Shown here: positions 733 to 64,000 of the stretch, piece by piece
Layout: every line of letters begins with the position of its first letter
How positions within the stretch are numbered: position 1 is the stretch's first letter
NCBI GenBank assembly: GCA_965285935.1
Contig: OZ260664.1
Span: 93,558,001-93,622,000 of the forward strand
DNA length: 64,000 nt
Direction: 5' to 3'
Origin: Ophelia neglecta
Taxonomy: Eukaryota
Notes under the pieces: model-generated
Seen by the model: the letters and a program-made list of their open reading frames with translations, nothing else
Told to the model about the DNA's origin: nothing
Databases searched by the model: none
Program-made: the position numbers and the translations under genes

Positions 733-805
733 CTGTCTGGCCAGTAACTCTTAGAATCAAAACGCCTGTAGTTATAAGTAAACTAACATAGACTTCACAA
801 ATCAT
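733..805 (-). CDS. Signal-peptide exon (exon 1) of a fifth receptor paralog whose other exons lie left of the window
   Basis: ATG at 805 reads MICEVYVSLLITTGVLILRVTGQT, then G|gttagt phase-1 donor. Near-identical 73-nt exons at 20727-20799, 34594-34666 and 50736-50808. Confidence 0.75.
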
Positions 806-1014
806 GTTCAGACCATAGCCACAGCTTGTAGATCAAGGTGTTATTGAGAAGTGAACTGAATCTATAGCACCAATATTATGATAGTTACGTGTACATCCTG
901 GTTTCTTATAAGTAAGCCCTCGTCTCTCAACAAATAAACGCGCCTATCCATGCGTTAAGAGGCGGCCCAAAAGCTCCGATGTCTAAAATGTTACGACGGA
1001 ACCAAATGTTGATG

Positions 1015-1195
1015 ACGGTGAACCATGTGTTAAAAGCATTTTGTAAGAAATTGGAGAAAAAATTCAAATATGTCAAGAACCTACATAATTTCACCAAAAT
1101 ATTAGTGGACCAATGTGGGGCCTTGTGTGACAAGGGGACCACTAATCCTTGCACACTTGTAGGGCCGGGGCGTGTACTGGTACCGGTAGGATAAG
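1015..1195. mobile_element. Left half of the same MITE (right arm deleted)
   Basis: Matches about 21008-21180, then jumps to sequence homologous to about 21585. Confidence 0.5.
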
Positions 1196-1509
1196 CAAAT
1201 GTGGCCATAGCAAGGACTAATATTTCTTCTTAAAACCGTGTAATTTTCGACGTTCGTGATTCCATAAACAATAAAAGATAAATTTAAATGCAACCAGGTA
1301 TTATTTGGTTCAAAGTTGAACCATGTTCCCAAAAACCAAACAAAATAAACGGCCAATGAGAAGTCACCAATTGATCACCGAAACAGTTAAAATTGTCGTG
1401 GACCAACTATTTGTGGTTTACATTATGTCTTACAATGACTTCCTGTGCTTTATCAACAAACCGGCCTTCACCTGAGCGATAATATAATGGACGAAGTCTA
1501 TTCCTATAG

Positions 1510-5190: not shown

Positions 5191-8100
5191 TTACATATCT
5201 CCGTTTGTATTCAACGCTTCGTACATCGGATCACCTATGGCAGTGGCATTTACTGAAAAGTACAGTCACAGTTTGGTTGAATTAGAAGATTTATCCCAAA
5301 TGCAACATTTATCTACACGTACGCAGGATGATATACAGTCATATTTGAATAACAATAATGATAATAATAATAGTTTATTGCCACTTCAACACATGTATAT
5401 TGAGGTTTATCATGCGGATATAATAGATTTGCAAACAAAATAACAAATGGTTTAGCAAAATAATTAATGACGTGTGAGACAAATGGAGTAATGAAGCATA
5501 ATGTTTATGGGCCAATGGCGTCTATTCTTACCATATGTGACTGGCTGGGGTAACGGTGTCTCGTACACGTGACTGTCTGTGACAGCTACTTCATGGGCTG
5601 AGGGAGGCTCATGGTCTGATTGATCATCTTGTCCTGGTTCTGTCCTGGGAAGCCTTTTGGCCCTACGTCTGTAATAAAGAGACCGAATACAACGCAAACA
5701 AAGGTGAATCATTACTCAAGAAGAGTTCATTAAGTCGGACCGAAATCATAAGGAACCTAAGTATATTCCGTGGGTGGACATATCATATTGCTTATGTCTT
5801 CCAATGTACAAGTACACGTGTCCATCTCGAATGTTGAAAAACACATTTGCTCGTTGACCCATACTTTACGATTTTTTTAAACAGGATTCCAACGCTTTGC
5901 GCGATAAGCCTATTCACATTTTACAAACCTGATAAGGACGACAATAGCTATTGTAACAAGAGCCACTATGATTAGGAAGCCAACGACTGATCCGGCAACA
6001 GGCGCCGCAAGTCCAAACTGGCCAGATGGGCCCTTTGCTGGGTCTGGAGAAGAAACCGGAAATATATGCATGATGATTAGTTGGTGAATAATCTGGCAAA
6101 TATATTTAGGAAGAAGCATTTGGTGACTGCTGAACACTGATGTTGAGGCGTAAACGATCTATAGCACTTTCAGTTGAATCAAAGTAAAAGTATCCATTAA
6201 GTTTATTTCATAAATCATGATTGATTACCTAGTCCCAGATCAGCCAAAGTAGTAGCTGAGACATTGTTTGCGTTCTGGGAGTATTCTGTCTTTCCACTGG
6301 GCAAGTGACGATACACGTTGATTAAAATCTGATACGTTATGTTGGCCAAAAGCCCAGGTAACCTTTGGCTGTATTTCATAAAAACAGTATCTTCACTTAT
6401 AGATCTTTCATATGATGTATTTTCTAATCTTGTATCCTCAAAAATGGTAATTCTGTAACCATATACTGCTGCACTGTTTAATGGCATGCCTTCAACATGT
6501 GACCACTCGACGGTAATACTAGCACTGGTCACATTGGTTACATAAACATGGTTGCTTTTGGGAAAGTCCACGTAACCTGTAAAAACATCCATAGCAGTAG
6601 ATTAGTGTCAATCATGTATATACACAGTTAATAGTGACTAATTGGCAATAAAATGTTAACAGAAAATCTAGTGACAAGAGAAAACCTACTGATAGATACG
6701 TTACAGTGTCTTCCTGTGTACCACGTGTCATACGGAATCAGTTGACAGCCACGACTACACACTCCACTGTCTCTCTCACAGGTCTGTGTGTTAGGTAATG
6801 TCTCACAGTGACCACTGCAGCTGTACTCACAAGTCTCACCGTAGTAGCCATACGGACACAGGGTACACTGTCCACTGTATCTTTCACACGCTGGGGTACC
6901 TTCATTAACAAAACAATTCGTACTACATGCTTTATTACAGTCGTCAGCAAAAAAACTGTTAACACAACCATGAATACAACTTCCATTTAATTGATTACAA
7001 GACCCAAATCCGTTTTCTGAAAGAGCTTTACAGTGGGTACTGCATCTTTGGTTGCAAAAATCGCGGTACCACCCATCCTGACAACCAGTATAGCACATTC
7101 CATTTGTTTTTGAACACACAGGCTTTCCATTAACTCTAGCACAGTGTGTACTGCAAGGACGTTCACACTTCTTGTCATAAAAACCATTGTTACAATCGTT
7201 GTTACAATCTCCTGTTTCTCTGTGACATGTGTTAGAGCCTGTGACAACAAGACACCCAGTGTTACAGGAGTCTTGACACTGTTCTCCGTAGAAAGGTTCC
7301 AAACATCCATTTACACATCGTCCGTTAGTGATAGAACATGACCTGGACCCCTGAACGCTAACGCAATTAGCACTACATTGCCCGCCACAATTGTCCCCGT
7401 ACTGTTTGTCACCACATTCTGCAAGATAAATTATTTACAAGTTTACGCCATTTACAAGCTTCGTCAACTACTACTGGTATACTGAAATATTAAATATGTG
7501 TTTTTATTTACTAAAGAGATAACGCTGATGACCGAGCGATACCACAGGAAGTTCTAGTGCACCTATGCTAAGTGCAATGGAATCCCATAGATGTTATGGC
7601 ACCTGTTGAAACATTGGGAATTACATTTATTAAAGCAACAAGACTAGCCTTCAAGGATGGCTTGTGTACACTATACTATCTTTTTTTCATCATCGCGTAT
7701 TCCTTAATATAAAGATAATTTTGCTATAAAATGTTTTACCACATTAGGTTAAAATCATTTTGTTACCATTATATTGAATGTTGATATTGGTGCGGTTGAC
7801 TCGTTAGCTTTGTGCTCTGAATCGCGTCATGGACAACTGTTAACTACTTCTCATTTTAACTGATATTAATGTTATTATTTGTTTTCTATTTTATTGTTTA
7901 CATTACAAACGTTTGGGGTTAGGACGAGGATAGCTACATTGTTGTATGTGGCCCTGTGCCTATTTTATAATGGATTATATTTGATTAGTTCTTCGTCTAC
8001 CGGGAGACCACTCCCGTTTTATTTTAGTCTGAACACTCTGTATATCGTTGAACTTATCTCTCGGCGTGACGTGAATGCATACGATTTCAATAATGAAACA

Positions 8101-11100
8101 CATTTAACTCTAAACAAAGGACTGAAATTAATTTTTCGATTAGACGTTAAAAAAAGATGGGTTACCTGTTTTACAATCTGGGTACTTAAATCCGTCAGTG
8201 CATTTTGAGCAGCCAGTTAAAGGGTTACATGACTCGCATTGGTCACAATCTAAAAAGAAAGAGCACCACCTAATAACGGGTGTAACTTGACAAGGCATAT
8301 TATAGCGACGAGTAATACTCGGAAGCCGATCATAAGATGCACTGTTTTTTATTTGGTCTTATCTATCTTTCTCAGGTGGTGAACTTGAACTGTAAATTTA
8401 CACTTCATCTGTCTCCAGTATATTAGGAACATAGATAAGACATAAATAAGGCAATTTAAATTAACATTAACAAGTATACAAAACCAAAACATTTAGATAA
8501 GTTTTTAGTGGCGTATTTTAAACGCAACTTTAACTAGCACACACCTCGATGCAAACACAATGTGGGAGACGGCTTCCAGGAGCTCCGAAGGTTGTTCTTA
8601 TTGGTATATATTTTTCTCCCAAGACAACGCAACCTTTTAACTTGTATTAATTCGATTTTCAAATAGTATACTTCTAGGCATGTAGCATTTTATACGTTTT
8701 GTGTTTTTTCAGTCTGATTTAAAGCCCATGGAGCCTGTTTACTAAACACGTGCTTCCAAGCTTGAATGAACCTGGATTGAAATAAGCTTCAACTTATACT
8801 TATACCTGTTTCATATAACCAAGGTCATCAAGGGATTGCGCGGTTATTGCTAAGCAATAAAAAATGGCTAGATTTGATTTTAAATGCTTTCTAATATTGC
8901 TTGGAAAAGCCATCTTAAAGTTACAAGAACTTACGTATAGCAGTAACGCTATGAGGTTTTGTCATATATGCATATTATTGTTAACAAATTGTTGAAAATC
9001 TCTAAAGCATAAATGTAGCTGGTGTGCAGATAAAGACTAGGATTGCCCTTTATGAAATCAAAATTCACACCCATAGTGCTCATTAATCGGAGAATCCGTC
9101 GGCAACCAGTGCTATATTTATGAAATGGCGCCCTGCACCCGGTCCCATAAAGCCATTTAGCTGGGTTTACCAGCGAAAGCCCGGACTAATTTGCTCGATA
9201 AGTGACGCTCTCGATTTCGTAACGGGAATCGGTGTCTAAGTATTTTGTTAACAAATTGACCAGACCAGAATTGATCTACTACTTCATTACTTCGATCTAC
9301 GAAACTATAGTACAATACAATATTAAAAGGATGTAGTGAATTCTTTATATGTGTGTTTAATAATAATCGGCCAAAAGTAGAAGTTCTGTGAGGAGTTTTG
9401 CGAAGCGCCAGTGGTACAATGGGCTGCCAGTATTACACTAAGGAGAGGCGCACGAGCTCTTCCCTTCGCCGGCAACTAGATAGCTTGTAGCTGGCATGGT
9501 AGTCTGCGCGACAGGTGATGGGGAAGAATATTTTTTACCCCTCCCTCGGAACGAAAGTAGATAGTCGGTGGTTGGCGTGGAAGTCAGCGCGGCAGCCGAT
9601 GGGGAAGGAGCACCGTCAGGCTCATCACGGCCAACTAAGTGAGGAAGCTATAATAAGCTATCATATTAGAAACTAAAAATGATACATCTTCTATATATTT
9701 GTTGCTTGGCTATAACAAAGGAAGGGTGGTTATATGTATATGCAGAAATTGAAGTTACAATGAAACAGGATTTACGGTTAAGCTGCATCTCACTTCATTC
9801 CTGGTCTGACCAAATCTAGCATGTGGCAAAACCAGGGGTATAAGCCGCCTGGTAGGGGCAATTTTTAATGACGTACAGAGAAACATACCGAATTTATCAA
9901 AATATAATATATTGCTTAAAAAAATAAGAGGTTCTCTGATAGTTCCCCCAGCGTAGAGAAGATCCAATTCATAAACGATGACTTATTTTAAAACAAATTC
10001 AGGTTCTAGTTTCATTGTTCATTGTTTCAACCATTCGTATTAATACAGTGCTTGAAATTGAAACTTTAGAGTGCTAGTTTTTACTGCTGTCATTCATATG
10101 TTGTACCTGATGCATAGATTTGAACACATTATCACACAAACTTTTATCAATACTCAAAGACATTTGATCGTATAGTCAAGTAGACGATACGAGTCCAACC
10201 AATTGTTTAATTTGCTTCAATAGAAAAGTATATACTTTGAATACGATAATTCGCTAGTGATCTCCTGCACTAAGCCCTTATTTTTTCTTGAGCATAAAAT
10301 GAGCCCTGTAGTTCTGGAGATGAGTGGATTACCATCCTTTATTTATGGCTGATATTATAAACCTGTTAAGTAATATTATTGGCAAAACAAAACAGAATGC
10401 TACAAGTTAGCGTGTGTAAATTTCGACAAATACGCCGGAATGACATTTTGCTGGTTAAATTTGGTTCAATCGTCAATGAAAATTGATTGCTTTTAAGTGA
10501 ATTAACGTTGTGATGCGTGCTATTTTCTGTTTGAAGAAACAATGCTTTACTTAATGTAATGGCGTGGTCCTCCTTTTGAAAATAAGCGTAGTATGGTCAG
10601 TTGTTAAATTTACCTATAGGTTTGTATCCATGAACCATCACCTCACACAGTCCAAGGAACTCAGGTTGTATTCCACCTGTCCTGATGATAGTTACATATC
10701 TACCAGTAACTGGTGTGTCACACATTATGGTGTCATGTCCTCCGTTGGGTACGACTCCTGTATAATCCTTACAAAGTCTTGTTTGGTCACCATCAGTAGT
10801 ATAACCCACGCCAAGACGGAAATTGCCAGTTCGTTCTATGAAAAGGACGTGTTGGTATAAGTGTAGATACCCAAAATTTGGATGGCAATTGTTTATAATT
10901 ATATCGAAATTGATAATGCCTGCGCTGAAAAGAAAGTTATTCCGTAAGCTTTGAAAAATCTATTAGTCCAGTCAATGAAAAAAAATCCATTGAGGTTGGA
11001 CAAAAATGTTAACAAAGGTTTTTCACCTGAAATAGGTTCAGTGGGGGTATGTTAGTCCACACAAAAAAAACCAACGCGAATCCACCCATGGCAAATCCTA

Positions 11101-14100
11101 ATTTTCAGCCCGAATCCAAGATGGCCGACTTTTTAATAGTAAAATGTACGAACACACTAAACTTTTTAACTTACTGTCATAGAAACACATTTAAAAGGTC
11201 ATTTCCCACTAAAATTAGGATACCGAATCACATGGTTATACTTCTGAGTCCATCAGAGGTCAGGTTAATGTAATATTGTCAAGGTCAAGGTCAAATATGA
11301 TCAAAATAAGCCAAAATCAGGAAAAATTGGCATTTATTTTAATTGATTACAATCAAGAGTACCCTACAGTCAACGCCCGCGGATAAGGGAGGGCCTCACC
11401 CTTCAACGTCCAGTTTCAGCCCTAACGTGAGCTACGTCTAGTATATGTCCTTTCATGGGATCGGCTTGTAGTTCGCTGACTTTAATTCGCTGCCTACTAT
11501 TTATCTTTATTATGTTTATAGGTTATTCACAGTTTAGATTTTGCCATCTTAATTTCCGTCTTAATATCAATACTTTTGTTTATGTTATCCGTATATTTCG
11601 CTGTCCTGCTTTTGAGAAATTTACTTACATGTCAAGCCATTTTGTCACCCTTCGTTTCACTCATGCTTCATTCTTCATTTCCACATCGCTTACATCAGCA
11701 ACTCGTGTTTGTATTATGCTTTCGTCCTACTCACACACAAGTTATCAAACTTGTGCTGTCAAGTCACCATTTGCGTCTTACGAATTTGTCTAACTATGTA
11801 CTCTCAGAAGCCCTTTTTTTTTTAAATCTGTCATGATTTGCATTGCCCAGTATAGAGCGACGATCGGTTTATTTTGCCTCAGCAAGTCTAAATTTGGGAG
11901 TGACGCCTTGTTCTGGTTCATAATATTTCCGTCCTTTCTTTTTAGCTTATTTGTGGCCCCAAACATTTTGCGTCAGTGCGGTGATGTCGTGACAAACCCC
12001 GGCCCTGCAGATAAGATTGGTATTTCCTTCTCTTACATGAATATACGTAGTATTTTAGCAGCCGCAGTTGTCAACGGCGCTCCGTGTCACGACAAATTTA
12101 CACACCTGTGCGCTTACGCCTGTCACTATAGGCACGACATTATTGCACTTGGCGAAACATGGCTAAATTCTAGTATTCTTGACTCCTCTGTTTCAATCCC
12201 TGGTTATCTACCGCCCTTCCGACGGGATCGCGAGGGTGTTGGAGGCCGTCTCGCTGTTTATCTATCTGAATCTTTTAAAGGCAAACGGATGAAAGCAGTA
12301 GAGTCTAATTTAATCACTAATGTTTGTATAAGTACCAAAATTCAAAATTCCCTGGTTTTGCTGTGCTTTTACTTTAGACCACCTTCTGAAGATTGTCTTC
12401 TTTTTCCTACTGGTATAGACGAAATCATAGACTCGGCCTCCGAAAGTCACGAAATTTTGGTCGTCAGATAGAACTAATGCTGACGGCCGTCTAATACATG
12501 CCAACGAGGTTTCTCACAAGTTATACACGAAGTAACCCGTAGTGACACTCACTCCGAGGCCTGCCTCGACCATGTATTTATCAACTCTACCGGTCCTTTG
12601 ATATCCAGCGGTAATCTACCACGTATGTTAGATAACTGTGACCATCTCCCAATTTTTGTTGAAATGTTCCATGCCGTCCGCAAACCTCGAGCATTTAAAC
12701 GGGAAATATGGGATTTCAAAAACGGCAATCACGAAATCTATCAGGATCTTTTGTTCTCGGCCCCGTGGGATTTGGTACTTTCTCTCTCTGACATCGACGA
12801 TATTACTGAAAACTTTACTATTACTTTGCTACAAATCGCAGAGCATTGCTTTCCTCACCGCGAGGTTGTTATAAGACCCTCGGATAAGCCCTGGATGAAC
12901 TCTGTTATTAGACGTGCCATGGCAAGGCGCGATCGCCTTCATAAATCCAGAAATATTAGTATTAATCATACTACCCGATACAACACTGCCCGTAACCATG
13001 TCACTGACCTTGTGCGCGAGGCTAAAGCTAATCTTGACGCCTCGACAGATGAAATAGCCAATTATAATAACATTTTATCTCCAAACTGGAGGCGACTTAT
13101 GAAGGCTATAATTAAGACTTCTTCCTCCCCCGTTCTTCCCCTGCTTTGCACCAGGGTGACAATATTATTTCTGACCCTAATCTAAAGGCCGATATTTTCA
13201 ACGATTTTTTTATAGAGCAGTCTACAATTGACGGAAGTAGTGATGAAGTTCCTAGTGAACCAATTCTAGTCTCTCCTGACAGCATCGATTCAAAAATAAT
13301 ATCAGCTCTTGAGGTATATAATGTTCTCAAAAACTTAAATACTTCTAAAGCGACTGGTGCTGATAAATTTGGCAACTATCTCCTTCGCGAGGCCGCTCTC
13401 CCTCTTTCTGAACCACTTTCATGTTTGTTTAATATATCTTTAGTCCAGTGTAAATTTCCCTCGTGCTGGAAGCAAGCAGATGTTATTCCCTTACATAAAA
13501 AAGGTGATATCCATGACTGTAATAATTACCGCCCAATTTCACTTTTGCCTTGCCTGTCTAAAGTCTTTGAACGTTTGATGTTCAATCACCTATACTCTCA
13601 CTTAAAAACCCAAAATATCCTTGTGCCTAATCAAGCGGGATTCATTCCTAATGATTCAACTATTAATCAACTTCTCGACATATGTGAGAATTTACACAGA
13701 ACATTGGATTTGGGCGATTCAATTATTGGAATCTTCATTGACTTTACAAAGGCATTCGATAAAGTATGGCACAAAGGCCTAATTTACAAGTTGAAGAGAT
13801 ACGGTATAACTAGCAGTACCCTTTCCTGGATATCTGACTATTTATGTGACTGTCGACAGCGCGTTGTTTTACCTGGCGGATCCTCGTCCTACAAATTGGT
13901 TCCTGCGGGGGTTCCCCAGGGGTATCCGTCCTGGGGCCCCTACTTTTTCTAGTATACATAAACGACATCGTCCTGGAGATATCAAATTGAGCTTACCTTT
14001 TTGCGGATGACACGTCGCTCTTTGCCAAAGTAAAACTTGACAATATTGCGCCTTCGCTTGTTCGTGTCAATGAGGATCTTGCTTATATTAATACCTGGTG

Positions 14101-17100
14101 CAACACTTGGAAGGTTTCCACCAGCACCAAAAAGACTACATACATCCTGTTTTCTCGTCACCGCCGCTCTGTTGACTATGAACTAAATCTTTTTCTTGGT
14201 TCTGACAAAATCACCAAGTCTTTTTCCCATTCCCACTTAGGTGTTTTATTAACCAGTAACTTGTCCTGGGATGAACACATCCTGCATATTGCCAAAAAAG
14301 CTTCTTCTAGGCTTAATATTATTAAATCTGTTAAATATGAAATGTCTCGCAAAGGCCGCGACATGGCTTACAAGTCATATGTTAGGCCCCTACTTGAATA
14401 CGGGTCAATACTTTTTGATAATGCTTCTGCTGAACTGCTCGATATCTTAGAAAACATAAATCTTAAAGCAGCCCGTATTGTCTGTGGTGCCCGTAAGGGC
14501 ACTTCTCATGATGCTCTTCTGCAGGAAGTGGGATGGGAATCTTTTCTTGCACGTCGTAAAGCGTCTCGCATTCTCAAGTTATTTGACATTTTTAACAACA
14601 ATACTCCTGCTCAGCTCCGGAACCACATCCCCCCACTTATTAGCCACTCCTATCCTACTAGGAGAACTTTTGAGGAATATGTGCCACTACCTTTCTTTCG
14701 CACTCAAAATTACAAACCTTTTTTCTTTCATAAAACCATCTGCGATTGGAACACGCTTTCATTGTCTACTCGTAATTTATGTCGGAAGTCCACGTTTAAA
14801 TCGTTGATACGGGAAAAATGTAAGAAGCCCCCGAAGTATTACTTTATGGGGTCACGCAAAACTCAGATTTTCCTATCCCAGTGCCGACTGTCATGCTCAT
14901 GCCTTAATTATCCCTGTGCGACGATTATGGGCTTCATCCTTGGTGCTGTCACCATGATACCCATCCATGTTAAACTTTGTTTGCCATGGATTTGCCATGG
15001 GTGGATTCGGGTGGTTTTTTTGTGTGGACTAACATACCCCCACTGAACCTTTTTCATGTGAGAAACCTTTGTTAACATTTTTGTCCAACCTAAACCATTT
15101 ACTGCTCGGACTATATCCCTGTTCTTCAGTAAGGGTGGTTTTTTAATTCAAGTAAGACCTAGGAACAATCTTAGTAGTGTTTTTGGTCCCGTGTACTGTA
15201 AGTATACATGCGTATTGCAGTAAGATAACCAATAGAACATGATATCTTAACAATGATGACGGTGTACACCAAAAAAGCAGTACCTTAAACACATTCAGTT
15301 TGCCAATAACAAAGCTGTATGTATATATATATAGCTGAGGTTTAGCCTATGCTGTTAAAAACTCATTGCAAATTAACTTTAGTTAGCAANNNNNNNNNNN
15401 NNNNNNNNNNNNNNNNNNNNNNNNNNNNNNNNNNNNNNNNNNNNNNNNNNNNNNNNNNNNNNNNNNNNNNNNNNNNNNNNNNNNNNNNNNNNNNNNNNNN
15501 NNNNNNNNNNNNNNNNNNNNNNNNNNNNNNNNNNNNNNNNNNNNNNNNNAGTATTTGTAATACTCAAGGCTGGGTTCATGGTAGACATTGTAAAGCCATT
15601 TATTATAATTCAAGAATGTTAGAACTATGTGATCAATAAATGTCACTAGTCATCTCCTTCATGTTATAATATACTAATACGTGTGCGAATTAAATGTAAA
15701 CAAATTATTAACTAACAGTCTACAATTTCAAATACAACAGCTCGATACGTCTGCTTTGGGGCAGGATGACGATCAATAAGTTTTATAGTGTATTATTCTG
15801 TTTTAATTTAACTGTCTGTAGACGACAACATTTTGATTGTTAAATGATATATATCGATTTATTTGTTTGGTTGTCCTATTTTTCAAACAGTTCAACAGAA
15901 GCAGGCAAATGCCAAACCTATGCCTTGACTGGTCGAATATAATCAGAAGTTTGAATAAAGTCCATAGGGTCAGCACAATAAGCTATACTGCAATTGACTT
16001 ACTGTGAGCATTGCCATTTCTATTGAAGATGGTGACACTGACAACTGTGTAGGCATCTTGTAGAGCGACGTACCACCAGGCTCTGTTCCCGTCCCCAGCG
16101 TCAGGATGGGCACAATACCGTTCTGCCGAGCCGATGATGCCGTCCACGGCTAGACCCGCGTGTAAACCATTATAAGTTCCTGTCTGAGAGGCCGGCTTTC
16201 CACGAGCTACATTACCTGTTAGAACAACAAGTTACGAATATGATATGATGTGCTTAATGGTGTAAGGTGTAAAGCCACTCGATCTCAAACTGACATGATT
16301 TAATCGAAAGCTGGTCAAGTTGACCTTATTTAATTCATTAGAGAGTTTTGGTAGGCGTTAGTAGATAAATAGTAGTGATTGGGTAGGGCTGAATTATCAG
16401 GGCTGGCTTGAAACGCCAACGACCATGTGTTACCTATTCTACAGCCAGTCCCAGTTCTCCGTATGCCGGCCGCCGGGGGATCATCCATCTGACACACTCC
16501 TTGGTACAAACATGCTCCTGTCTTCCTGTCACAGGCAGATGTACACAGACAAGGAAACACACACCCAGCATTGGTATCGCCAAACCTGCACAGATCTGGG
16601 GACAGATATGTAAACTAAATGAATTCATTTTGTTACGCATATTGATGGTGTCCTTTCAAAATATAACAGAAATAGCTATGTATTTTGTTTTATGATACCA
16701 AAAAAGGCCAAAACAACAACGACGTACTGCTCAAGGTAAATCTATAGCTCGGGGCGGAGATTAAGAATGTACCATACGTCAAAAAGCTTCGTAACTGATC
16801 ACCGACAGTCGGAGATCTGCCTTGCAAAAGTAGGCCCCTTGGTCAACCGTCATATTCGGAGTGTTAAAAAAAACTAGGTGTTGTCTGCATATTTGCGGGT
16901 GTTATCTCTAAAGGCACGATGATTTTGCCAGTGTGGCTATACCACGAGTCAGAACCAGACAAGGAAATGTTAGTGTATGCTAGCCCATCAGTAGCAGACA
17001 TATAGAGGTTACAAAGTAACCTGAAATTACATTTCCAAGGCTGCACAGCCTGGCCCGTCGTAGGTTTCAATAGGACGTTTGTCCCCTGGCTTTATTAAAG

Positions 17101-50235: not shown

Positions 50236-51016
50236 CTGACTTTTGTCCGTTTCATATTATCCAGTTTATTACGGCGTATCCCGTGAAATAAGGATAATTG
50301 AGGCATAACGTATCTCACATTTTAAAAAATCATTTTCACACCAATGGTTTTACAAATATGACCGCACCCTAAAGGGCTAGGATATGCATGAGCAAGCAGC
50401 CCCCCCCTTACACACAGACAAGCACAAATGGGTTGTGTGCAGTACATTTTCTGGATAACTACCGGGTGCATTGAATCAAAAAGTAAAGATAAAAGGCATA
50501 TACATATCTCCCTATTACATGTATTTTAAAATTACAAAGCCTATTCTGAACAGCCGAACTTAGAACAAGTAAATTACATAAATTCAAATAATACATGACG
50601 TAAGAACCATATCCATATGTACGTGTTTGTATTAACCGGCGAGGAATAAGCTACACAGACATGCAGTGACATACATCTAGTTAGACAACACGTTGTAACA
50701 ATATTTGTAATAGCTTGACAGCAACATTCACTAACCTGTCTGGCCAGTAACTCTTAGGATCAAAACGCCTGTAGTTATTAGCAAACTAACATAGACTTCA
50801 CAAATCATGTTCAGACCATAGGCACAGCTTGTAGATCAAGGTGCTGTTACGAAGTGAACTGAATCTATAGCATCAATGTCACGATATTTACACATACTTT
50901 CCGGTTTCTTATTAGTAAGCACTCGTCTCTAAACAAATAAACGCGCCTCTCCATGCGTTAAGGCGGTCTCTAACGTTCCGATGGGTAAAATAGTACGACG
51001 TTATCAAATGTTGATG

Positions 51017-53032: not shown

Positions 53033-56000
53033 TATCGTCTACAAACAAACAATTGGCTAAACAACCTCATTTACGCTTTCGTAACTAGGCAAGTTGAATA
53101 CAATTATAGCCTATTATATATCATGATTGATATTACAGTGACTGCAGATGGTCATCAGATCTAGCAGATTCTCTACCCCCAATTTCGAGACATTAGTCAG
53201 TGTAACAAAAAAAAACTAGGATAAGGGAATTTAAATCTCGCTGTACTGATTTGAGCCAAACTTGCGTATGATGTTTTTTGCGCTGCTGCTGACGGTTCCT
53301 TCGGGCTGGTTTATTGTATCATTCCTGATTAATGTCTTTGAATTGTTTGCTGGACATTTGAAAAATGTATAGCTCATTATTTGATGCTTTGCTTGCTTAT
53401 TAAAATTGTAGTTGTAATTGTATTTTGTGATTATCCGTGCCTTCCGAGGACTCATTACACCTGTCGGTTATCTAGAGGAAAAGCATTTTTAATAAAGAGT
53501 GCTCTCTGAAGAAGCAGCTTGATTATAAACAAGACTATATTGTATGTTATAAGTAATACCTACATTCAATATTGAAGGAAAATTAAGTATGTCAGTTCAA
53601 GTACGTAGGTTTATTACCATCCGACAAAGAAATAAGTACAAACCAACAAATAACAATGGTATTAAGGAAATTACAAAGAAACATATTATATATAATCATA
53701 CTAGTGAAATTGACTGCAATTTGGCCGCATAAAACACAATTGTATATATTATGTTGAACGATGAAAAGGCCACATTTTTCATACTAAGTCAGCTAACTAT
53801 GTGGACACTCACGTCGGTGGGTACCAGAAATAACACTTGTGCGATTGTCAAATATACATGTGTGAAATAAAATACCTTTAAAATAACTTTTTAAGAACAA
53901 ACAATGGTAAACACAGGAATTATTAATAATAAGCTCAACATACTTGTTTGCTTAAGTATACGAGGTTGCTTTTATAATGCACTGCTGCATTTTAAGACTT
54001 AAAATTTGAAAACAACTTTATATGCGTTTGATATGTGAACATTTCCAGGCCCTAAGAATTCTCGGAAAGAAGAAATGACAATGTTATTGAACTGATTTAA
54101 ATTGTCAAGTATGTCTGCAGATAGTTAAAAGTACAGTCCAATATAGAAAAGGGTAACCAGTTTTATGTCTTGTTCCAGGCAAGGCCTGTTCACAAGTAAA
54201 AACTAATTTCACCTGGTATATATACCTGCTGAATCATTTCTCTCCTAAGTCATCTTAACTCCTCAGGGAAAATACACAGAACAGTCGCCGCAGCGCGAGA
54301 AATCTAATTCATTTGGCAACCAGGTAACCATTCGCCTCTTAGGTAGAGAGTGGTTCATTTGGTTTAAAGTCTTTGTCAGAGGTGATCGCCGGTCATTCAG
54401 TCTGGGAGCTGTGCTCGATACCAATTCGGCCACAGCGCCACAAATAATATAAAGGACCTTACGTTATCAAAATATTCTGAATTGCAAATTGTGGTGCGAT
54501 TTAAAATCAATTAAATGGCTTAGATATTTATGACCCCAGTAGAGCAATACTAACAAGCTGATGTTTATTCATGTTGCACAGGAAAAGGAAATAAAACATT
54601 TTTTTCATGTTGGAAAATGGTTACTTTAACGAAATTCCACAGGTGGCATTCATCACGTCCATTTACGTACTGCCAACTCTACTTGTTACATATCTCCGTT
54701 TGTATTCAACGCTTCGTACATCGGATCACCTATGGCAGTGGCATTTACTGAAAAGTACAATCACAGTTTGGTTGAATTAGAAGTTTTATCCCAAATGCAA
54801 CATTTATTTACATGTACGCAGGATGATATACAGTCATATTTGAATAACAATAATAATAATAATAATAGTTTATTGCCACTTCAACACATGTATATTGAGG
54901 TTAATCGTATGGAAACAAAATAAAAGATTTGCTAACAAAAGAACAAATGGTTTAGCAAAATAATTAATGACGTGTGAGACAAATGGAGTAATGAAGCATA
55001 ATGTTTATGGGCCAATGGCGTCTATTTTTACCATAGGTGACTGGCTGGGGTAACGGTGTCTCGTACACGTGACTGTCTGTGACAGCTACTTCATGGGCTG
55101 AGGGAGGCTCATGGTCCGATTGATCATCTTGTCCTGGTTCTGTCCTGGGAAGCCTTTTGGCCCTACGTCTGTAATAAAGAGACTGAATACAACGCAAACG
55201 AAGGTGAATCATTAATCAAGATGAGTCGGACTGAAATGATCAGGAACCTAAGTATATTCCGTGGGTGGACATATCATATTGCTAAGGTCTTGCAATGGCC
55301 AATTACAGCAGTCAATCTCGAATGTTGAAACACACATTTGCCCGTCGACTTATACTTTACGATTTTCTTAACAGGATTCCAACGCTTTGGTGTAAAGCGC
55401 GATTAACATATTCACTTTTACACACCTGATAAGAACGACAATAACAATTGTAACAAGAGCCGCTATGATTAGGAAGCCAACGACTGATCCGGCAACAGGA
55501 GCCGCAAGTCGAAACTGGCCAGATGGGCCCTTCGCCGGGTCTGGAGAGGCTACTGAAAACGTTTATATGATGATTAGTTGGTGAATAAACTGGCATACAT
55601 TTATAGCAGTTACAGTTGAATCAAAGTAAAAGTATCCATTGAGTTTATTTTATTGATCATGATTGATTACCTCGTCCCAGATCGGCCAATGTATTAGCTG
55701 AGACATTGTTTGCGTCCTGGGATTCTTCTGTCTTTCCACCGGGCAAGTGACGATACACGTTGACTCAAATCTGATACGTTGTGTTGGACAAAAGCCCAGG
55801 TAGCCTTTGGCTGTATTTCATAAAAACAGTATCTTCACTTATAGATCTTTCATATGATGTATTTTTTAATCTTGTATCCTCAAAAATGGTAATTCTGTAA
55901 CCATATACTGCTGTACTGTTTAATGGCATGTCTTCAACATGTGACCACTCGACGGTAATACTAGCACTGGTCACATTAGTTACATAAACATGGTTACTCT

Positions 56001-56130
56001 TTGGAAAGTCCACGTAACCTGTTAAAATATCAAAACAGTAAATAAGTGTCTATAGTGCATATACACAGACAATAGTGACTAATTGGCAAGAAAATGTGAA
56101 CAGAAACTCTAGTGACAAGGGAAAACCTAC

Positions 56131-56844
56131 TGATAGATACGTTACAGTGACTTCCTGCGTACCACGTGTCATAGGGAATCAGTTGACAGCCATGACTACA
56201 CACTCCACTGTATCTCTCACAGGTCTGTGTGTTAGGTAATGTCTCACAGTGACCACTGCAGCTGTACTCACAAGTCTCCCCGTCGTAGCCATACGAACAC
56301 AGGGTACACTGTCCACTATACCTTTCACACGTTGGAGTACCTTCATTAACAAAACACTTCGTACTACATGCTTTATTACAGTCGTCAGCAAAAAAAACGT
56401 TAATACAACCATGAATACAACTTCCATTTAATTGATTACAAGACGCAAATCCGTTTACTGGAAGAGCTTTACAATGGGTACTGCATCTTTGGTTGCAAAA
56501 ATCGTTGTACCACCCATCCTGACAACCCAAGCATATTCCATTTGTTTTGGCACACACAGGCTTTCCATTGACACTAGCACAGTATGAACTACAAGGACTT
56601 TCACACTTCTTGCCATAGAAACCATTGTTACAATCGTTGTTACAATCTCCTGTTTCTCTGCCACATGTGTTAGAGCCTGTGACAACACGACAACCACTGT
56701 TACAGGAGTTTTGACACTGTTCTCCGTAAAAAGGTTCCAAACATCCATTGACGCATCGTCCGTTAGAGATAGAACATGACCTGGACCCCAGAACGCTAAC
56801 GCAATTAGCACCACAATTGTGCCCGTACTGTTTGTCACCACATT
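56131..56844 (-). CDS. Paralog D exon 6: EGF-like repeats
   Basis: 714-nt open exon; matches ORF 56030-56740. Confidence 0.85.
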
Positions 56845-59800
56845 CTGCAAGATAAATTATTTATAAGTTTACACCATTTACAAGCTTTGTCAACTACTAC
56901 TGGTATACTGACGTATAAAATATGTTTTTATTTTCTAAAGAGTTAAAGCTGATGACCGAGCGATACCACAGGACGTTCTAGCGCACCTATGGTAAGTGCA
57001 AGGGAATCCCTTGTTGTGACACCTGTCGAAACATTGGTAATTACATTTGTTAAAGCAACAAGACTAGCATACAAGAATGGCTTGTGTACACTATACTATC
57101 TTCTTTTTTTTCATCGCGTATTCCTTAATATAAAGATAATTTTGCTATAAAATGTTTTACCACATTAGGTTAAAATCATTTTCTTACTACTATATTGAAA
57201 GTTGATATTGGTGCGGTTGACTCGTTAGCTTTGTGTTCTGAATCGCATCATGAAAAACTGTTAACTACTTCTCATTTCAACTGATATCAATGTTATTGTT
57301 CTATTGTTTTATTTTATGTTGTTAACATTAGAAGCTTGTTTACTGGTTTGGGGGGGGGGGGGTAGGGTGAGGATAGCTGCATTGGTGTATGTGGGCCTGT
57401 GCCTATTTTATAATGGACTATTCTTGATTAGTTCTTTGTCTGCTGGGTGTCCACTCCCGTTTTATTTTAGTCTGAACACCCTGTATATCGTTGAACTTAT
57501 GTCTCGGCGTGACGTGAATACGATTTCAAAAAAGTAACACATTTAACGCTAAACAAAGAACTAACATTAATTGTTTGATTAGACGTTAGAAAAAGATGGG
57601 TTACCTGTTTTACAATCTGGGTACTTAAATCCCGCAGTACACCTTGAGCAGCCAGTTAAAGGGTTACATGAATGGCATTGGTGGCTGTCACAATCTGAAA
57701 GAAAGAGCACCACCTTATAACGGGTGTAACTTGACAAGGCATATTATAGCGATGAGTACCACTCGGAAACCGATCATAAGAAGCACTGTATTTTACTTGG
57801 TCATATCTATCTTCCATAGGTCTTGAACTTAAACTGCTAATTTACACTTCATCTGTCCAAGTACATTAGGAACATGGATAAGACATTAATTAGGCACTTC
57901 AAATTAACCTCAACAAGTATACGAAACAAAAGCATTTAGATACGTTTTTAGAGGCGTCTTTAAACGCAGCATTAACTGGCACACACCTCGATGCATGCAC
58001 AATGTGGGAGACGGCTCCCCGGAGCTCCGAGGGTTGTTCTCATTGAGATATATTTTTCTTCCAAGACAACGCAACCTTTTAACTTATATTAATTCGATTT
58101 TCAAACAGTATACTTCTAGGATGTAGCATTTCAAATGTTTTGTGTTTTTTCAGTCTGATTAAAATCCCATGGAGCCTGTTTAATAATCACCTGATTCTAA
58201 GCTTGGTGGAACCTGGATTGAAATTAGCTTTAACTTAAACTTTTTCCTGTATCATATAACCACAGTCATAAGGGGATTGCGCGGTTATTGCTCAGCAATA
58301 AAAATCGGCTAAATTTGATTTCAAAAACTTTCTAATACTTGGAAAAGGCATCTTAAAGTTCCAAGAACTAACGTAGCTAGTTTGCGGATAAAGACTGGGA
58401 TTGCCCTTTATGAAATCAAAATGTACACCAATCGGATCATTAATCGGAGATTCCGCCGGCAACCAAGGCTTTATGTATGAAATGGCGCCCTGGAAAAAGC
58501 CATCAAGCTGGGCTTGCCGGCGAAATCCCGGCCTAATTTGCTCGACAAATGTGGATTTCGATTTCATAAACGGGAATCGGAGTCTATGATACAATAGTAT
58601 AATGTAACAGACAAAGTTCTCTGCATTAATTCCCACTATTTAAATTCAATATGCGTGAATACATTATATGCGTGTTTATTAAGAATCGGCCGAAAATATA
58701 AGTTCTGTGTCGAGTTTTTCGAAGCGCCAATGGTAGAATGGGCTGCCACTACTACATTTAAGAGAGGCGCGCGAGCCCTTCCTTCACCGGAAACTAGATA
58801 GCCTGTAGCTGGCTTGGTAGTCTGCGCGACAGGTGAGGGGCAAGCATATTTCTTGCATATACGTCGGTGGCTGGCGTGGAAGTCAGCGCGGCAGCCGATG
58901 GGGAGGAAGCACCGTCAGGCTCATATTGTCCATCAGTGCCAACTAAGTGAGTGAGCTATAGTGAGCTATCACATTAGAAACTCTAAATAAAACATCTTCT
59001 ATATATTTGTTGCTTGGTTATAACAACGGAAGGGCGGTTATATGTATATGCAGAAATCCTCTTTACAATGAAAGAGTAATTAAGTTTCGGCTAACATCAA
59101 TCCAGGTCTGGCCAAATATAGCATGTGGCAAAACTAGAGGTATAAGCCGTCTGGTAGGGGCAGTTTTTACTGGCGTACAGAGAAACATACTCTCCGAATT
59201 TATTAGAGTATACTAGAAGCGTTAAGAAAGGTTCTCTGATAGGTCCCCCAGCTTAGAGAAGATACACCTAATAATCGATGACTTATTTTAAAACAAATTT
59301 AGGTTCTAATTTCATTGTTCATTGTTTTTACCCATTCGTATTTATACAGTGCTAGGATGATTTGAATAATTAGAGTGTTAGTTATTACTGCGGTCATTTA
59401 TATGCTGTACGTGATGTATACATTTGAACACATAAGAACATATATCAATACTCAAAGGCGCTTGATCGTGTAGTCAAGTAGACGATATGTGGCCAACCAA
59501 TTGTTTAATTTGCTTCAATAGAAAAGTATAGACTTTGAATACGATAATTCGCTAGGGATCTCCTGCACTAAACCCTTATTTTTTCTTGAACATTAGGAAA
59601 ATGAAATGAGCCCTGTAGTTCTGGAGATGTGTGGATTACCATTCCTTTTTTGCTGGCTGATATTATAAACCGGATAAGTACTATTATTGGCAAAACAAAA
59701 TAGAATGTTGAAGGTTAATTAGCATGTGTAAATTCCGACAAACACGGCGGACTGACATATTGCAAATTTGGTTTCAATCTTCAGTGAAAGTTGATTGTTT

Positions 59801-59920
59801 TTAATGGATTAACGTAGTGATGCGTGCTATTTCTATTTGAAGAAGCAATACTTTTACTTAATGTTATGACGAGGTCCTCTTTATGGAAATAAGATTAAAA
59901 TGGTCAGTTGTTGAATTTAC

Positions 59921-60997
59921 CTATAGGTTGGTATCCATGAACCATCACCTCACACAGTCCAAGGAACTCAGGTTGTAGTCCACCTTTCCTGATAATAGTT
60001 ACATATCTACCAGTAACCTGTGAGTCACATATTATGGTGTCATGTCCTCCGTTGGGCACGGCTCGTGTATAATCCTTACAAAGGCTTGTTTGGTCACCAT
60101 CAGTAGTATAACCCATGCCAAGACGAAAGTTGCCGGTTCGTTCTATGAAAAGGACGTATTGGTATTAAGTGTAGATACCCAAAATTCGGAGGGCAATTAT
60201 TTATTATTATATCGAAATTGATAATGCCTGCGATGGAAAAAGTAAGCTATTCCGTAAGCATCGAAAAACCTATCATTGTTCTTCAATATAAAAGTGGGTA
60301 AATATTATTTAAACCGGAGACATGTGTTTTTATCCGCTGGTTATGATTGTTATGCTTGGTATATTGAACATTTTTATTCAAGTAAGAACTAGGAGCAGTC
60401 TTACTGCAGTAAGATAAAGAACATGATATCATAACAATGATTACGTTGTTGTAATAAACTAATGTGGGTGCGAATATAATCTAAACAAACGGTCCACAAG
60501 ATTTATACACAACAGCTCGATACGTCTGCTTTGGGGCAGCATGATGACTAATAAGTTTTGTTGTGTATTATTCTGTTTTAAATTAACTGTCTGTAGACGA
60601 CAACATTTGGATTGTTATATTAAATATATATCGTCGTATTTGTGTTTGGTTGTCCTAATCTATTTTCAATGTTCACAGAAGCAGGCAAATGCTAAACCTA
60701 TGCCTTGAATGGCGAATATAATCAGAACTTTGAATAAAGTCCATAGCGACAGTTCAATAATCTATACTTCGATTGACTTACTGTAAACATGAACATTTTT
60801 TCGATTGAAGATGGTGACACTGACAACTGTGTAGGCATCTTGTAGATCGACGTACCACCAGGCTCTGTTCCCGCCCCCAGCGTCAGGATGGGCACAATAC
60901 CGTTCTGCTGAGCCGATGGTGCCGTCTACGGCTAGACCCGCGTGTAAACCACCAAACGTTCCATTCTGAGAGGCCGGCTTTCCACGAGCTACATTAC
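59921..60997 (-). CDS. Paralog D F-type lectin exons 3 and 4 (60997-60782, 60142-59921), both open
   Basis: Same motifs and splice phases as paralogs A and B. Confidence 0.8.
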
Positions 60998-63869
60998 CTG
61001 TTAGAATAACAAGTGACGAATATGATATGATGTGCTTAATAATGTATGGTTTTAAGCCAATCGCTCTCAAAACTGCCATAATGTAATCGAAAGCTGGTCA
61101 AGTTGAACTTGTCTAATTCATTAGAGAGTTGAGCTCCGATTTTGGTAGGCGTTAGTAGGTAAATAGTAGTGATTGTGGAGGGCTGAATTGTCAGGGCAGG
61201 CTTGAAACGCCAACGACCATGTGTTACCTATTCTACAGCCAGTCCCAGTTCTCCGTATGCCGGCCGCCGAGGGATCATCAAACTGACACACTCCTGGGAA
61301 CAAACATGCTCCTGTCTTCCTGTCACAGCCAGATGTACACAGACAACATAACACACACCCAGCATTGGTATCGCCAAACCTGCACAGATCTGGGGACAGA
61401 GATGTAAGCTAAATAAATTCATTTGGTTCGCACATGCCTTGTGTCCTTTCATAATATACAAGTACTAGCTATGTATTTTGTTTCATGATACTGAGGGAAA
61501 AAAATTGTTAACGTCTCGATCACAAATTCGCTTTCTTTCATAATTTAATAATGAACACTACCTTAATCAGTAACATTACAACTCGGTCCCCTTAAACATA
61601 TTTTACAACTTCCACCCCATCCCACGCCGCGCGGAACGGAGGCCTTTCAAGCCCCTTAAGGTACGGCGCACGGTGTATGGCCAAGAAAATAGATCTATTG
61701 GACCAAATTACGATTGATCATCAAAAAATATCGTTCCACAACCTAGCGCAACGTTCGACTTGCTACCTTGCATCCACTAACCGTCCCACTTCAGCCCGCC
61801 CCCTGCCCCCCCCCCCCCCCCAACCTCTCTCTCGTTTCTACCCGCCCTACCCTCTTTTCCGAAAGAGCTGAAAGTCCATGTCTAACTTATCAAGTGATAT
61901 TCCTTCACTAAAGGCGTTTACCACTATACTGGGACAGTGTTTTCATCACATAGGCAGCACGTTTAGCTTATGAATGTCAAGCCAGCGTACAATCGAATCC
62001 ACAACAACAATGCTTTCGACACAGTTTTTGGTTTTGCTGTTTACACAAAGCCGCTTTTCACCATGTGAACCATTTTTGAATAGCTGTGCAACTTGATATT
62101 ATCATAAAGGAATGTAAATAACTCATATATTAATACAATATACTGCATATCTCAGGAATTTATATGGGCTGTTACTATTTTCACACTATAAAACAATGTA
62201 GGTCCTATATTATCCAGAAGTTTCTCCGAGGAAAATGTTTAATAACTGTTCCGTGAACGCAAAAATAATAGAGCGACACTCTTCCTAGCGGCCTAGTAAT
62301 CACACCTAGAAATTGTCAGTGAGGCTAGACGTTTTTCAGGTTAGCTGCAACATTGAGCCCCCCCCCCCCCCCCACACCCCCTACGCCGCCATACATAAGT
62401 GCCCTCATCACTACACCCATTAAGTGTTGGTTCTATATTCCACGTGTGCAGACACTCTGTAATTTATGTAACTTTATAGAATATAATTTAATATTTGCTT
62501 TTATGTTGAGCCATCCATTTACAATCATGACGCATTGTAACAGTTCTTTGTGTAACTGTGTGTTCTACATGTACCTGTATTGCGTCAACACTTTCTACCT
62601 ACATCTTTCTAAAAGTTTGCTTGTCGACAGCATGCATGTGGGTACACTGTGGAACCTACAACTAGTAGTGGTTTAAGGCAAATAAAGATAACATGCCTAC
62701 ATTTATACATGTATTCAGGACAATTTTACATATGGTTGCTTAGTATATACTGAGAAAAACGGTCGCAATCAATTATAACTTGGTGAGCCTTACACGCTTT
62801 TTTTTCACTATTGTTTTAAAACTTGCGCAGACTGTATGGAAGCGTCTAGGTTGTTTGAAATTTTGCATTGCTTTCTTCAATCTCCCACTGAATGTAAGTC
62901 AATTTTATGTGTATATATTGTTTGTCATGTGCATGTATTTTTGTCAGCTGACTCGAGTGTCTCGAATGAATCATCAAGCACGGATGCCTTTCACGATAGT
63001 GTAGAAAATCTGCCGAGCGATACACATCGTATTGTACCGATAAATACAGCCACACATGTAATGACTGCAGGATTACCATACCCGCTTTTTATGTTCACTT
63101 GAAGGTAAATGAACTTGCAACCTTTAGCAATAATGAAGCACCCCAAGCTCGTGCCTATACAAATACTTTCAGGTACAAGAACCAGTAACAGGACAAAATG
63201 TTGGAAGCAAACCAGCCAGTTCTTAAGAAAAGCGATAGCTTTTAAACAGACATTCGGCACAATTAGGTTGTACGAAGTCCAACTTGATTATGTTAAGACA
63301 TATTGGGCTAGTTCCCAGGAACCTTCTTACCGGCTGTCTTACAACCACTCTCGGAAATTGCGGTTTATCAATAAATGATATGTTTTTACCAATAAATGTG
63401 TATTATATATGTGACCCGGTACGACGCGCCAACTCAACTACGTTTAGGCCAGGTGCGTGCCGTTACAGTTTCGGAGCAGCCCGTTCTGGGCATTCGGAAA
63501 TACACAAGTGTCTTATCAATTGCCGGGCACACCGGAGAAAAAGCCTTTAATCGGCATCGTAATCCCACAAGGCGGTTCCATAAGCACACGTACCCCCCTA
63601 GTTAGACGAAATTTTAGTATTATACGATGAGAAAGTGTGATTCCATCTCGTGCACAAAGTCAAGGCAGTAATATTTAGTACATGTTTTTAGCCATTACAA
63701 AATTAAACATAATGAAATTGGCGCGGTAATGTATAAGGAAGCATCTTGCTGAACACATTTAATAGTAGAAAGCCTGTTTTGTTTGAATAATTTCAAATTG
63801 CCGACAATAATCGCTTTCATTACCATGTTATGATTTATTGATTTAATATACAGGTTACCATCCTGAAGT

Positions 63870-64000
63870 CATTACAACCTCGTGGTTTCCAGGCCTATTA
63901 CCACAGGTTATACAACAGACTTATTACCACAGGTTGTTCTCCCTGTTTATTTGCTCGGCGTGTACACCAGACGTATTTACACGAGGTGTACACCAGACGT
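63870..64000. repeat. 26-bp minisatellite, intron 1 of D (runs off the window)
   Basis: Same consensus; the last 49 bp match window positions 1-49 at 48/49. Confidence 0.85.

What the first reader, a model, noticed from the sequence alone, without database searches (positions are those of the whole stretch)
733..64000. Tandem cluster of diversified F-type-lectin/EGF/FN3 signalling receptors (at least 5 copies)
Seen: at least five head-to-tail copies of a 10-exon gene (signal, EGF-like, FTLD, EGF stalk, FN3, TM, Tyr-motif tail) with no kinase or phosphatase domain; exon-1 spacings are 19994, 13867 and 16142 bp. Known: F-type lectins bind fucosylated glycans in immunity and gamete recognition, and Draper/MEGF10-type EGF receptors signal through Tyr motifs. 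Inference: a birth-and-death family of glycan-recognition receptors (innate immune, allo- or gamete recognition), organised like vertebrate paired-receptor clusters. I do not recognise this architecture as a named family.
Basis: partly seen in the sequence, partly recalled or inferred. Interest (0 to 1): 0.88.

Follow-up and report, generated by a model that had tools for sequence, protein, structure and literature searches.

The report
Lectin receptors paired with a phosphatase twin
A mollusc-like genome carries a tandem row of surface-receptor genes (sugar-binding head, EGF stalk, FN3, membrane anchor, short tyrosine-motif tail) next to a sister gene with nearly the same outside part but a tandem tyrosine phosphatase inside, which resembles the paired activating and inhibitory receptors of vertebrate immunity.

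Summary
On the minus strand lies a tandem array with units of 14-20 kb. Each unit is a 10-exon gene: signal peptide, Cys-rich exon, F-type lectin domain in two exons, small Cys exon, EGF-like stalk, FN3, TM, and two tail exons with Tyr motifs.

Only genes A (714 aa) and B (720 aa) are intact.
- C has a 26-nt deletion, a 1-nt insertion and a lost donor site.
- D has an in-frame TGA.
- A sixth copy, right of the window, is a fragment.

The gene whose exon 1 sits at 733 is not phosphatase-free. Just left of the window it runs into tandem PTP domains.

That receptor PTP and the tail genes share about 86% identical ectodomains. Homology stops about 18 nt after the TM exon. A second cluster 6 Mb away holds two more such PTP/tail pairs with the same breakpoint and homologous, motif-conserved tails. 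More than 100 lectin/EGF exons of this family lie in the genome, many followed by PTP exons.

The best reading is a paired-receptor-like system. No RNA data exist, so expression is untested. First-stage notes of this scan proposed the same idea on other DNA of this genome.

The parts
733..805 (-). Exon 1 (signal peptide) of gene 0, the receptor-PTP partner; its other exons lie left of the window
   Evidence: E1-E8 open, then tandem PTP exons at window -9.0k to -16.5k
5191..20799 (-). Gene A, 10 exons, intact 714-codon frame. E1 20799-20727, E2 16595-16434, E3 16215-16003, E4 10835-10614, E5 8249-8166, E6 7418-6690, E7 6576-6229, E8 6043-5929, E9 5668-5532, E10 5252-5191
10935..15138 (+). Retroelement insertion (RVT_1 reverse transcriptase) in intron 3 of gene A; accounts for the longer unit
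15390..15549 (.). Assembly gap, inside intron 3 of gene A
   Evidence: flanks colinear with B intron 3; not filled
24742..34666 (-). Gene B, 10 exons, intact 720-codon frame. E1 34666-34594, E2 31369-31208, E3 30978-30763, E4 29716-29495, E5 27549-27460, E6 26960-26235, E7 26121-25774, E8 25588-25474, E9 25213-25077, E10 24815-24742
   Evidence: lectin His replaced
38572..50808 (-). Gene C, broken copy. E1 50808-50736, E2 45786-45625, E3 45395-45180, E4 44528-44307, E5 41690-41601, E6 40798-40098, E7 40004-39672, E8 39389-39275, E9 39005-38869, E10 38660-38572
40098..40798 (-). E6 of gene C with a 26-nt deletion near 40502 and a 1-nt insertion near 40366 (two frameshifts)
   Evidence: short-read unitigs of one sample show no indel against the assembly here
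39660..39675 (-). Lost canonical E7 donor in gene C; the whole FN3 exon of C is a divergent tract (about 64% aa identity to all other copies)
54686..61389 (-). Gene D without its exon 1 (E1 lies at window 65709-65637). E2 61389-61228, E3 60997-60782, E4 60142-59921, E5 57694-57605, E6 56844-56131, E7 56018-55671, E8 55540-55426, E9 55168-55032, E10 54747-54686
55765..55767 (-). In-frame TGA in the FN3 exon of gene D (other copies have a Leu codon)
24634..24639 (-). AATAAA-type signal about 100 nt after the stop of gene B; equivalents at 5072-5067 (A), 38479-38474 (C), 54569-54564 (D)
   Evidence: use not shown
33545..34127 (.). 26-nt minisatellite in intron 1 (22.5 units in B; 4.9 at 20135-20262 in A; 8 at 5-213 in gene 0)

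Best explanation
The window holds the tail-type half of a paired-receptor-like locus.

Shown: each intact gene (A, B) encodes a type I membrane protein with these parts:
- a signal peptide;
- a Cys-rich module;
- a divergent F-type lectin domain;
- a rod of SCARF/MEGF-type EGF-like modules;
- one FN3 domain;
- an uncharged TM helix;
- a cytoplasmic tail of about 66-72 residues with three or four tyrosines in SH2-type contexts (YETP, YVN, YE.L, YEEF).

Shown: directly downstream lies gene 0. It has the same ectodomain and TM (about 86% identical) but carries tandem PTP domains instead of the tail.

Inferred: the lectin tip binds a fucosylated or related glycan on a microbe, another cell or a gamete. 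Clustering then lets Src-type kinases phosphorylate the tail, which recruits SH2 adaptors. The phosphatase twin sees the same ligand and sets or reverses that phosphorylation.

Shown: tail and PTP versions of three ectodomain subtypes stay matched up to a fixed breakpoint just after the TM exon.

Inferred: this matching is maintained by gene conversion or unequal crossing-over, with ongoing gene birth and death.
For: - Gene models and open frames of A and B.
- Lectin identity: the best PDB hits of E3 and E4 are FBP32, Sm-hPAF and eel agglutinin.
- EGF fold. FN3.
- PTP partner: a PF00102 hit at C7:93545117. Its D1 has a WPD loop and a Cys-x5-Arg site; its D2 also has Cys-x5-Arg. E1-E8 of gene 0 are open.
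- Homology of gene 0 with B ends about 18 nt after E8.
- A second cluster at C7:87.2 Mb holds two more PTP/tail pairs. E6 identity is 85-87% within a pair and 51-64% between subtypes. Homology there ends 8 nt after E8.
- The ectodomain tree groups by subtype with 100/100 support. One clade of all PTP forms is rejected, p-AU 2.7e-78.
- The tail exon occurs 9 times in the genome and only in these two clusters. Its Tyr motifs are conserved while the rest of the tail diverges.
- dN/dS: exon 2 at or above 1, lectin 0.55-1.18, EGF about 0.5, TM about 0.25, tail exon 0-0.6.
- Public bivalve relatives show both wirings. Eight of 22 EGF-stalk PTPs also carry the lectin-type domain, and a Saccostrea 'draper-like' protein has lectin, EGF, TM and a Tyr tail.
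- Oyster agranular hemocytes co-express many draper-like genes and more than 40 receptor PTPs (PMC13070813).
Against: - There is no RNA evidence at all: splicing, the 3' end and expression are inferred.
- Two of the four tail genes in the window, plus the neighbouring fragment, are broken, so the tail type may be decaying.
- dN/dS near 1 at the tip fits relaxed constraint as well as diversifying selection, and the pairwise counts are small.
- The sugar-binding triad is incomplete in intact gene B (His and Lys lost) and spaced one residue short in A.
- No charged TM residue and no strict ITAM or ITIM is present.
- Opposite signalling by the two forms is an analogy, not a result.
- I named the grouping tested after seeing the identity matrix.
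Confidence: 0.58

Rival explanations
1. The tail-type copies are by-products of tandem duplication that lost the phosphatase part and are drifting towards pseudogenes. Only the receptor PTPs of the family function.
For: C, D and the fragment beyond D are broken. dN/dS is about 1 in the lectin and exon 2. Binding-site His and Lys are lost in B. The tail exon is rare in the genome, with 9 copies against many PTP-linked copies.
Against: The tail exons are homologous between subtypes whose ectodomains are only 51-64% identical, and they keep all Tyr motifs while other tail residues change. The tail exon has 0-2 replacements among A-D. A and B keep ten exons, all splice sites and open frames. Three separate PTP/tail pairs persist.
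Confidence: 0.2
2. The tail-type proteins do not signal on their own. They act as co-receptors, decoys or built-in substrates that associate with the phosphatase twin through the near-identical ectodomain and TM helix and tune its activity.
For: TM and ectodomain are nearly the same in the two forms. The genes are adjacent. The tail is short and rich in phosphorylatable Tyr.
Against: Nothing here shows association. Conserved YVN and YE.L contexts look like docking sites for SH2 adaptors rather than mere substrate sites. That is inference from known SH2 preferences, not tested.
Confidence: 0.17
3. The copies are an assembly artefact: collapsed or duplicated haplotypes, or a false join at the gap.
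For: One scaffold gap lies inside gene A (15390-15549). The DNA runs that hold the stretch come from a single sample.
Against: Copies differ by 6-20% and by indels, a retroelement, two tail variants and a divergent FN3 tract. B, C and D lie on gap-free sequence. Short-read unitigs at 97% likeness or more cover all 30 bins of the C region in two of the three runs (27 in the third) without indels. The gap flanks are colinear with another copy's intron.
Confidence: 0.03

Closest known systems
Vertebrate paired immune receptors (KIR, LILR/PIR, SIRP alpha/beta, Siglec-5/14, CEACAM1/3)
   Same: Clustered genes with near-identical ligand-binding ectodomains but different cytoplasmic wiring. Ectodomains are kept matched between partners while signalling parts differ. 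There is birth-and-death turnover with pseudogenes.
   Different: The ectodomain here is lectin/EGF/FN3, not Ig or C-type lectin. One arm carries its own tandem phosphatase instead of an ITIM that recruits SHP-1/2. The other arm has Tyr motifs in its own tail and no charged TM residue for a DAP12-type adaptor. Opposite function is not shown.
Draper / CED-1 / MEGF10 and SCARF1 (SREC-I) engulfment and scavenger receptors
   Same: A rod of the same type of EGF-like modules (best fold match SCARF1), a single TM and a short Tyr-motif tail. Public relatives are auto-named draper-like or MEGF10/11-like.
   Different: No EMI domain, no NPxY motif and no canonical ITAM. An F-type lectin head and an FN3 domain are added.
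Classical receptor-type protein tyrosine phosphatases with tandem D1-D2 domains (such as CD45 or RPTP alpha)
   Same: Gene 0 and many family members have a TM followed by D1 (WPD loop, Cys-x5-Arg) and D2. EGF-stalk PTPs with the lectin-type domain exist in public bivalve proteomes.
   Different: Genes A-D have no PTP exon. I found no paper describing a lectin/EGF/FN3 ectodomain as a named PTP subtype.
F-type lectins (eel agglutinin, striped bass FBP32, Streptococcus Sm-hPAF, oyster bindin)
   Same: Sequence match over both halves of the domain. The His ... Arg ... Lys/Arg positions are recognisable in most copies.
   Different: The Asp of the Arg-x-Asp motif and the vicinal Cys pair are absent. 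B lacks the His and the Lys. The domain is membrane-anchored as the tip of a receptor instead of a soluble lectin. Sugar binding is untested.

Membership tests
F-type lectin domain (FTLD) | Sequence or fold similarity to solved F-type lectins | tested here: met
   E3: FBP32 7.5e-07, Sm-hPAF 1e-06, eel agglutinin 3.3e-05. E4: FBP32 1.1e-09. The two exons hit positions 2-42 and 57-91 of PF22633. The joined domain was not searched because it has no reference.
F-type lectin domain (FTLD) | Fucose-binding triad His ... Arg-x-Asp-x4-Arg/Lys | tested here: inconclusive
   His, Arg and Lys are present in gene 0, C and D. In A the Lys is one residue closer. In B His is replaced by Leu and Lys by Gln. 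The Asp is Asn, Ala or Gly in all copies.
F-type lectin domain (FTLD) | Binds fucose-containing glycans | not testable with these tools
   Needs recombinant domain and a glycan array.
Draper/CED-1/MEGF10 | N-terminal EMI domain followed by EGF-like repeats | tested here: not met
   No EMI hit. The N-terminus is a Cys-rich exon plus the lectin. EGF-like repeats are present.
Draper/CED-1/MEGF10 | NPxY and YxxL/ITAM motifs in the tail | tested here: not met
   No NPxY. Tyr contexts are YETP, YVN, YEAL/YEEL and YEEF. The pair YEEL-x6-YEEF in B and C is only ITAM-like.
Receptor-type protein tyrosine phosphatase | Cytoplasmic PTP domain(s) | tested here: not met
   Genes A-D: tblastn with 25 PTP-bearing relatives finds nothing in the window, and homology to gene 0 ends after E8. 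The feature is met for gene 0 outside the window.
Paired receptors | Very similar ectodomains joined to different signalling modules, encoded side by side | tested here: met
   Three pairs have 85-87% identity in E6 against 51-64% between subtypes. The breakpoint lies 8-18 nt after the TM exon.
Paired receptors | Charged TM residue that recruits an ITAM adaptor in the activating member | tested here: not met
   The TM helix has no Lys, Arg, Asp or Glu.
Paired receptors | Opposite signalling outcomes on the same ligand | not testable with these tools
   Needs cell assays.

The most novel reading that the evidence does not exclude
This would be an invertebrate paired-receptor system in which the counter-acting arm is a receptor tyrosine phosphatase. 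A glycan-reading F-type-lectin/EGF/FN3 ectodomain is kept matched, by conversion up to a fixed point after the TM exon, between a tandem-PTP form and a Tyr-motif form. It is repeated over several subtypes inside a family of more than 100 genes. That would be a convergent solution to the KIR, SIRP and Siglec logic.
Probability: 0.42. Interest if true: 0.8.

Novelty: new variant of a known kind. Interest (0 to 1): 0.62.

Why it matters
Paired activating and inhibitory receptors are seen as a hallmark of vertebrate immune recognition, driven by pathogen pressure. A lectin-based family in a mollusc-like genome appears to do something similar. The same sugar-reading head is wired either to a built-in phosphatase or to a docking tail, and the two versions are kept alike by recombination.

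If this holds, the same logic would have arisen independently with different parts. It would also give a concrete, testable entry into how invertebrates tune recognition without antibodies. And it would explain why draper-like genes and receptor phosphatases expand, and are expressed, together in bivalve blood cells.

Tried and rejected
- RNA evidence: the one run search found no RNA run. The three holders are short-read DNA unitigs of one sample, so junctions and expression stay untested.
- Close public homologues: the exhaustive protein search with the stalk exon gave nothing above 49% identity. No transcript-derived protein of this species could be used.
- Organism: a TRIM-NHL neighbour gave only 25-36% hits. 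Hsp70 gave 77-79% to oysters and clams. The best I can say is probably a bivalve-like mollusc without close relatives in the collection.
- Exon 2 as EGF-like: no Pfam hit, and the model had pLDDT 48.8, too poor to search.
- Stalk exon: no Pfam EGF model and no PDB sequence hit. This was settled only by fold.
- Kinase wiring: some public relatives carry Tyr kinase domains, but none lies near this cluster.
- Literature: four searches found no description of lectin-headed receptor PTPs or of PTP-based paired receptors.
- Joined (spliced) proteins were not sent to any search or fold tool. Exons were searched one by one by reference. Joining was done only inside scripts, to count stops, lengths and substitutions.
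- The gap was not filled or looked up.
Full report
**What is in the window.** Direct-repeat analysis shows four copies of almost every 200-300 nt block, 60-97% identical. Spacings are about 19.5-20.0, 13.8-13.9 and 16.0-16.1 kb. All long protein-like frames of these units lie on the minus strand.

I aligned the copies exon by exon and read the boundaries. This gave a 10-exon model with GT-AG at every intron.
- E1 holds an ATG, a hydrophobic leader and a donor.
- E2 to E7 are all phase 1-1, E8 ends in phase 2 and E9 in phase 1.
- E10 carries the stop, with an AATAAA-type signal 92-118 nt further on.

Joined inside a script only, gene A (20799-5191) gives 714 codons and gene B (34666-24742) gives 720 codons without stops.

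**Broken copies.**
- Gene C has a 26-nt deletion and a 1-nt insertion in E6, and has lost the canonical E7 donor.
- Its FN3 exon is a foreign tract, about 64% identical to every other copy.
- Gene D has an in-frame TGA at 55767-55765. Its exon 1 lies 1.6 kb beyond the window.
- Further right is a fragment with E5-E10 only, whose E6 is split by 6.5 kb.
- Short-read unitigs of one sample cover the C region and show no indel against the assembly.

**The gap.** N 15390-15549 lies in intron 3 of gene A, next to a 4.2 kb insertion that encodes a reverse transcriptase. The flanks are colinear with intron 3 of gene B, where the matching interval is about 142 nt. No reading frame crosses the gap. I did not fill it or read its counterpart.

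**Domains, searched exon by exon by reference.**
- FN3 passes Pfam's cut-off (26.4 bits).
- E3 and E4 hit the first and second halves of PF22633. Their best solved relatives are F-type lectins: FBP32, Sm-hPAF and eel agglutinin, with E from 1e-9 to 3e-5.
- The stalk exon hits no Pfam EGF model and no PDB sequence. A model built on 16 aligned sequences (pLDDT 85.5) matches the EGF-like fragment of human SCARF1 best (E 2.6e-8), then Notch ligands, Tie2 and laminin LE modules.
- Exon 2 (eight Cys) stays unassigned.
- The tail has no NPxY. Its tyrosines sit in YETP, YVN (across the E9/E10 junction) and YEAL or YEEL contexts; B and C add YEEF.

**The phosphatase twin.** The stalk's nearest public relatives are bivalve proteins at 36-43% identity. 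Several end in PTP or Tyr-kinase domains. No such exon lies in the window.

A PF00102 match lies at C7:93545117, just left of the window. I fetched that DNA. The gene whose exon 1 is at 805-733 has open E1-E8. It then has juxtamembrane exons, a D1 domain with a WPD loop and a Cys-x5-Arg site, and a D2 domain. Its homology with gene B runs from exon 1 to about 18 nt past the E8 donor and then stops. It has no E9/E10.

**Pairs elsewhere.** The E9 tail occurs nine times in the genome: five times here and four times at C7:87.18-87.26 Mb. In that second cluster, PTP genes and tail genes again alternate.

E6 identities define three subtypes, each with a PTP form and one or more tail forms. Identity is 85-88% within a subtype and 51-64% between subtypes. 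PTP-versus-tail homology there ends 8 nt after E8.

A maximum-likelihood tree of E6+E7 groups by subtype with 100/100 support. It rejects one clade of all PTP forms (lnL difference 866, p-AU 2.7e-78). I named that grouping after seeing the identity matrix.

The tails of the subtypes are homologous (47-56%) and keep every Tyr motif while the membrane-proximal part changes. A single origin of the tail, together with ectodomains that match within pairs, calls for conversion or repeated exchange bounded by intron 8.

**Selection.** Pairwise Nei-Gojobori estimates are as follows:

| Region | dN/dS |
|---|---|
| Exon 2 | at or above 1 (8-10 replacements against 0-2 silent changes) |
| Lectin | 0.55-1.18 |
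| EGF | about 0.5 |
| FN3 | 0.3-0.9 |
| TM | about 0.25 |
| E9 | 0-0.6, with 0-2 replacements |

Replacements in the lectin cluster around the His loop, the Arg/Lys stretch and two later loops. Intact B has lost the His and the Lys. The counts are small and include broken copies.

**Size of the family.** The stalk exon has 126 matches at E of 1e-20 or better. Most lie on C7 (87-92 Mb) and C16, with some on C5. At least 20 stalk exons have a PTP exon 4-7 kb downstream on the same strand. In public bivalve proteomes, 8 of 22 EGF-stalk PTPs also carry the lectin-type domain. A Saccostrea 'draper-like' protein has lectin, EGF, TM and a Tyr tail.

**Context.** The organism is probably a bivalve-like mollusc without close relatives in the protein collection. 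In the eastern oyster, agranular hemocytes co-express dozens of draper-like genes and more than 40 receptor PTPs (PMC13070813). This concerns relatives only.

First-stage notes of this scan proposed the same paired reading on other pieces of this genome. Those notes are unchecked. I reached and tested the idea here on this locus and on the 87.2 Mb cluster.

**Verdict.** The array and the gene model are real, and the architecture claim holds for A-D. The 'no phosphatase' claim fails for the first copy and for the wider family.

The best-supported reading is a paired-receptor-like system of a glycan-reading ectodomain with two wirings, kept matched by recombination. It comes with high gene turnover. 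Expression, ligand and signalling are all untested.

Noticed in passing
window 5-213, 20135-20262, 33545-34127 (also about 63871-64000): A 26-nt minisatellite sits in intron 1 of every copy, with very different unit numbers (8, 4.9 and 22.5). It could be a hotspot for unequal exchange.
   Followed up: partly
window 11833-15046 (+): A non-LTR-type retroelement with an RVT_1 reverse transcriptase, antisense inside intron 3 of gene A and adjacent to the assembly gap.
   Followed up: partly
L006:7119-9100 (-), about 21 kb left of the window: An intron-poor TRIM-like gene (RING-like Cys/His start, B-box, coiled coil, NHL repeats) lies just downstream of the receptor PTP. Its public relatives are only 25-36% identical.
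   Followed up: partly
window 39672-40004 (-): The FN3 exon of broken gene C is about 64% identical to all other copies of both clusters. It therefore came from an unsampled subtype, a sign of exon-scale exchange between distant family members.
   Followed up: partly
G000:C7:89.12-89.96 Mb: A dense sub-cluster where only the last third of the stalk exon matches (positions 145-234). Many lectin exons there show a single in-frame TAA or TGA. This may be a shorter-stalk subfamily or a field of pseudogenes.
   Followed up: no
window 5191-5252 and 54686-54747 versus 24742-24815 and 38572-38660: There are two tail-end variants. A and D stop after one YEAL motif. B and C go on to a second YEEF motif. 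The variants do not follow the order of the genes.
   Followed up: partly
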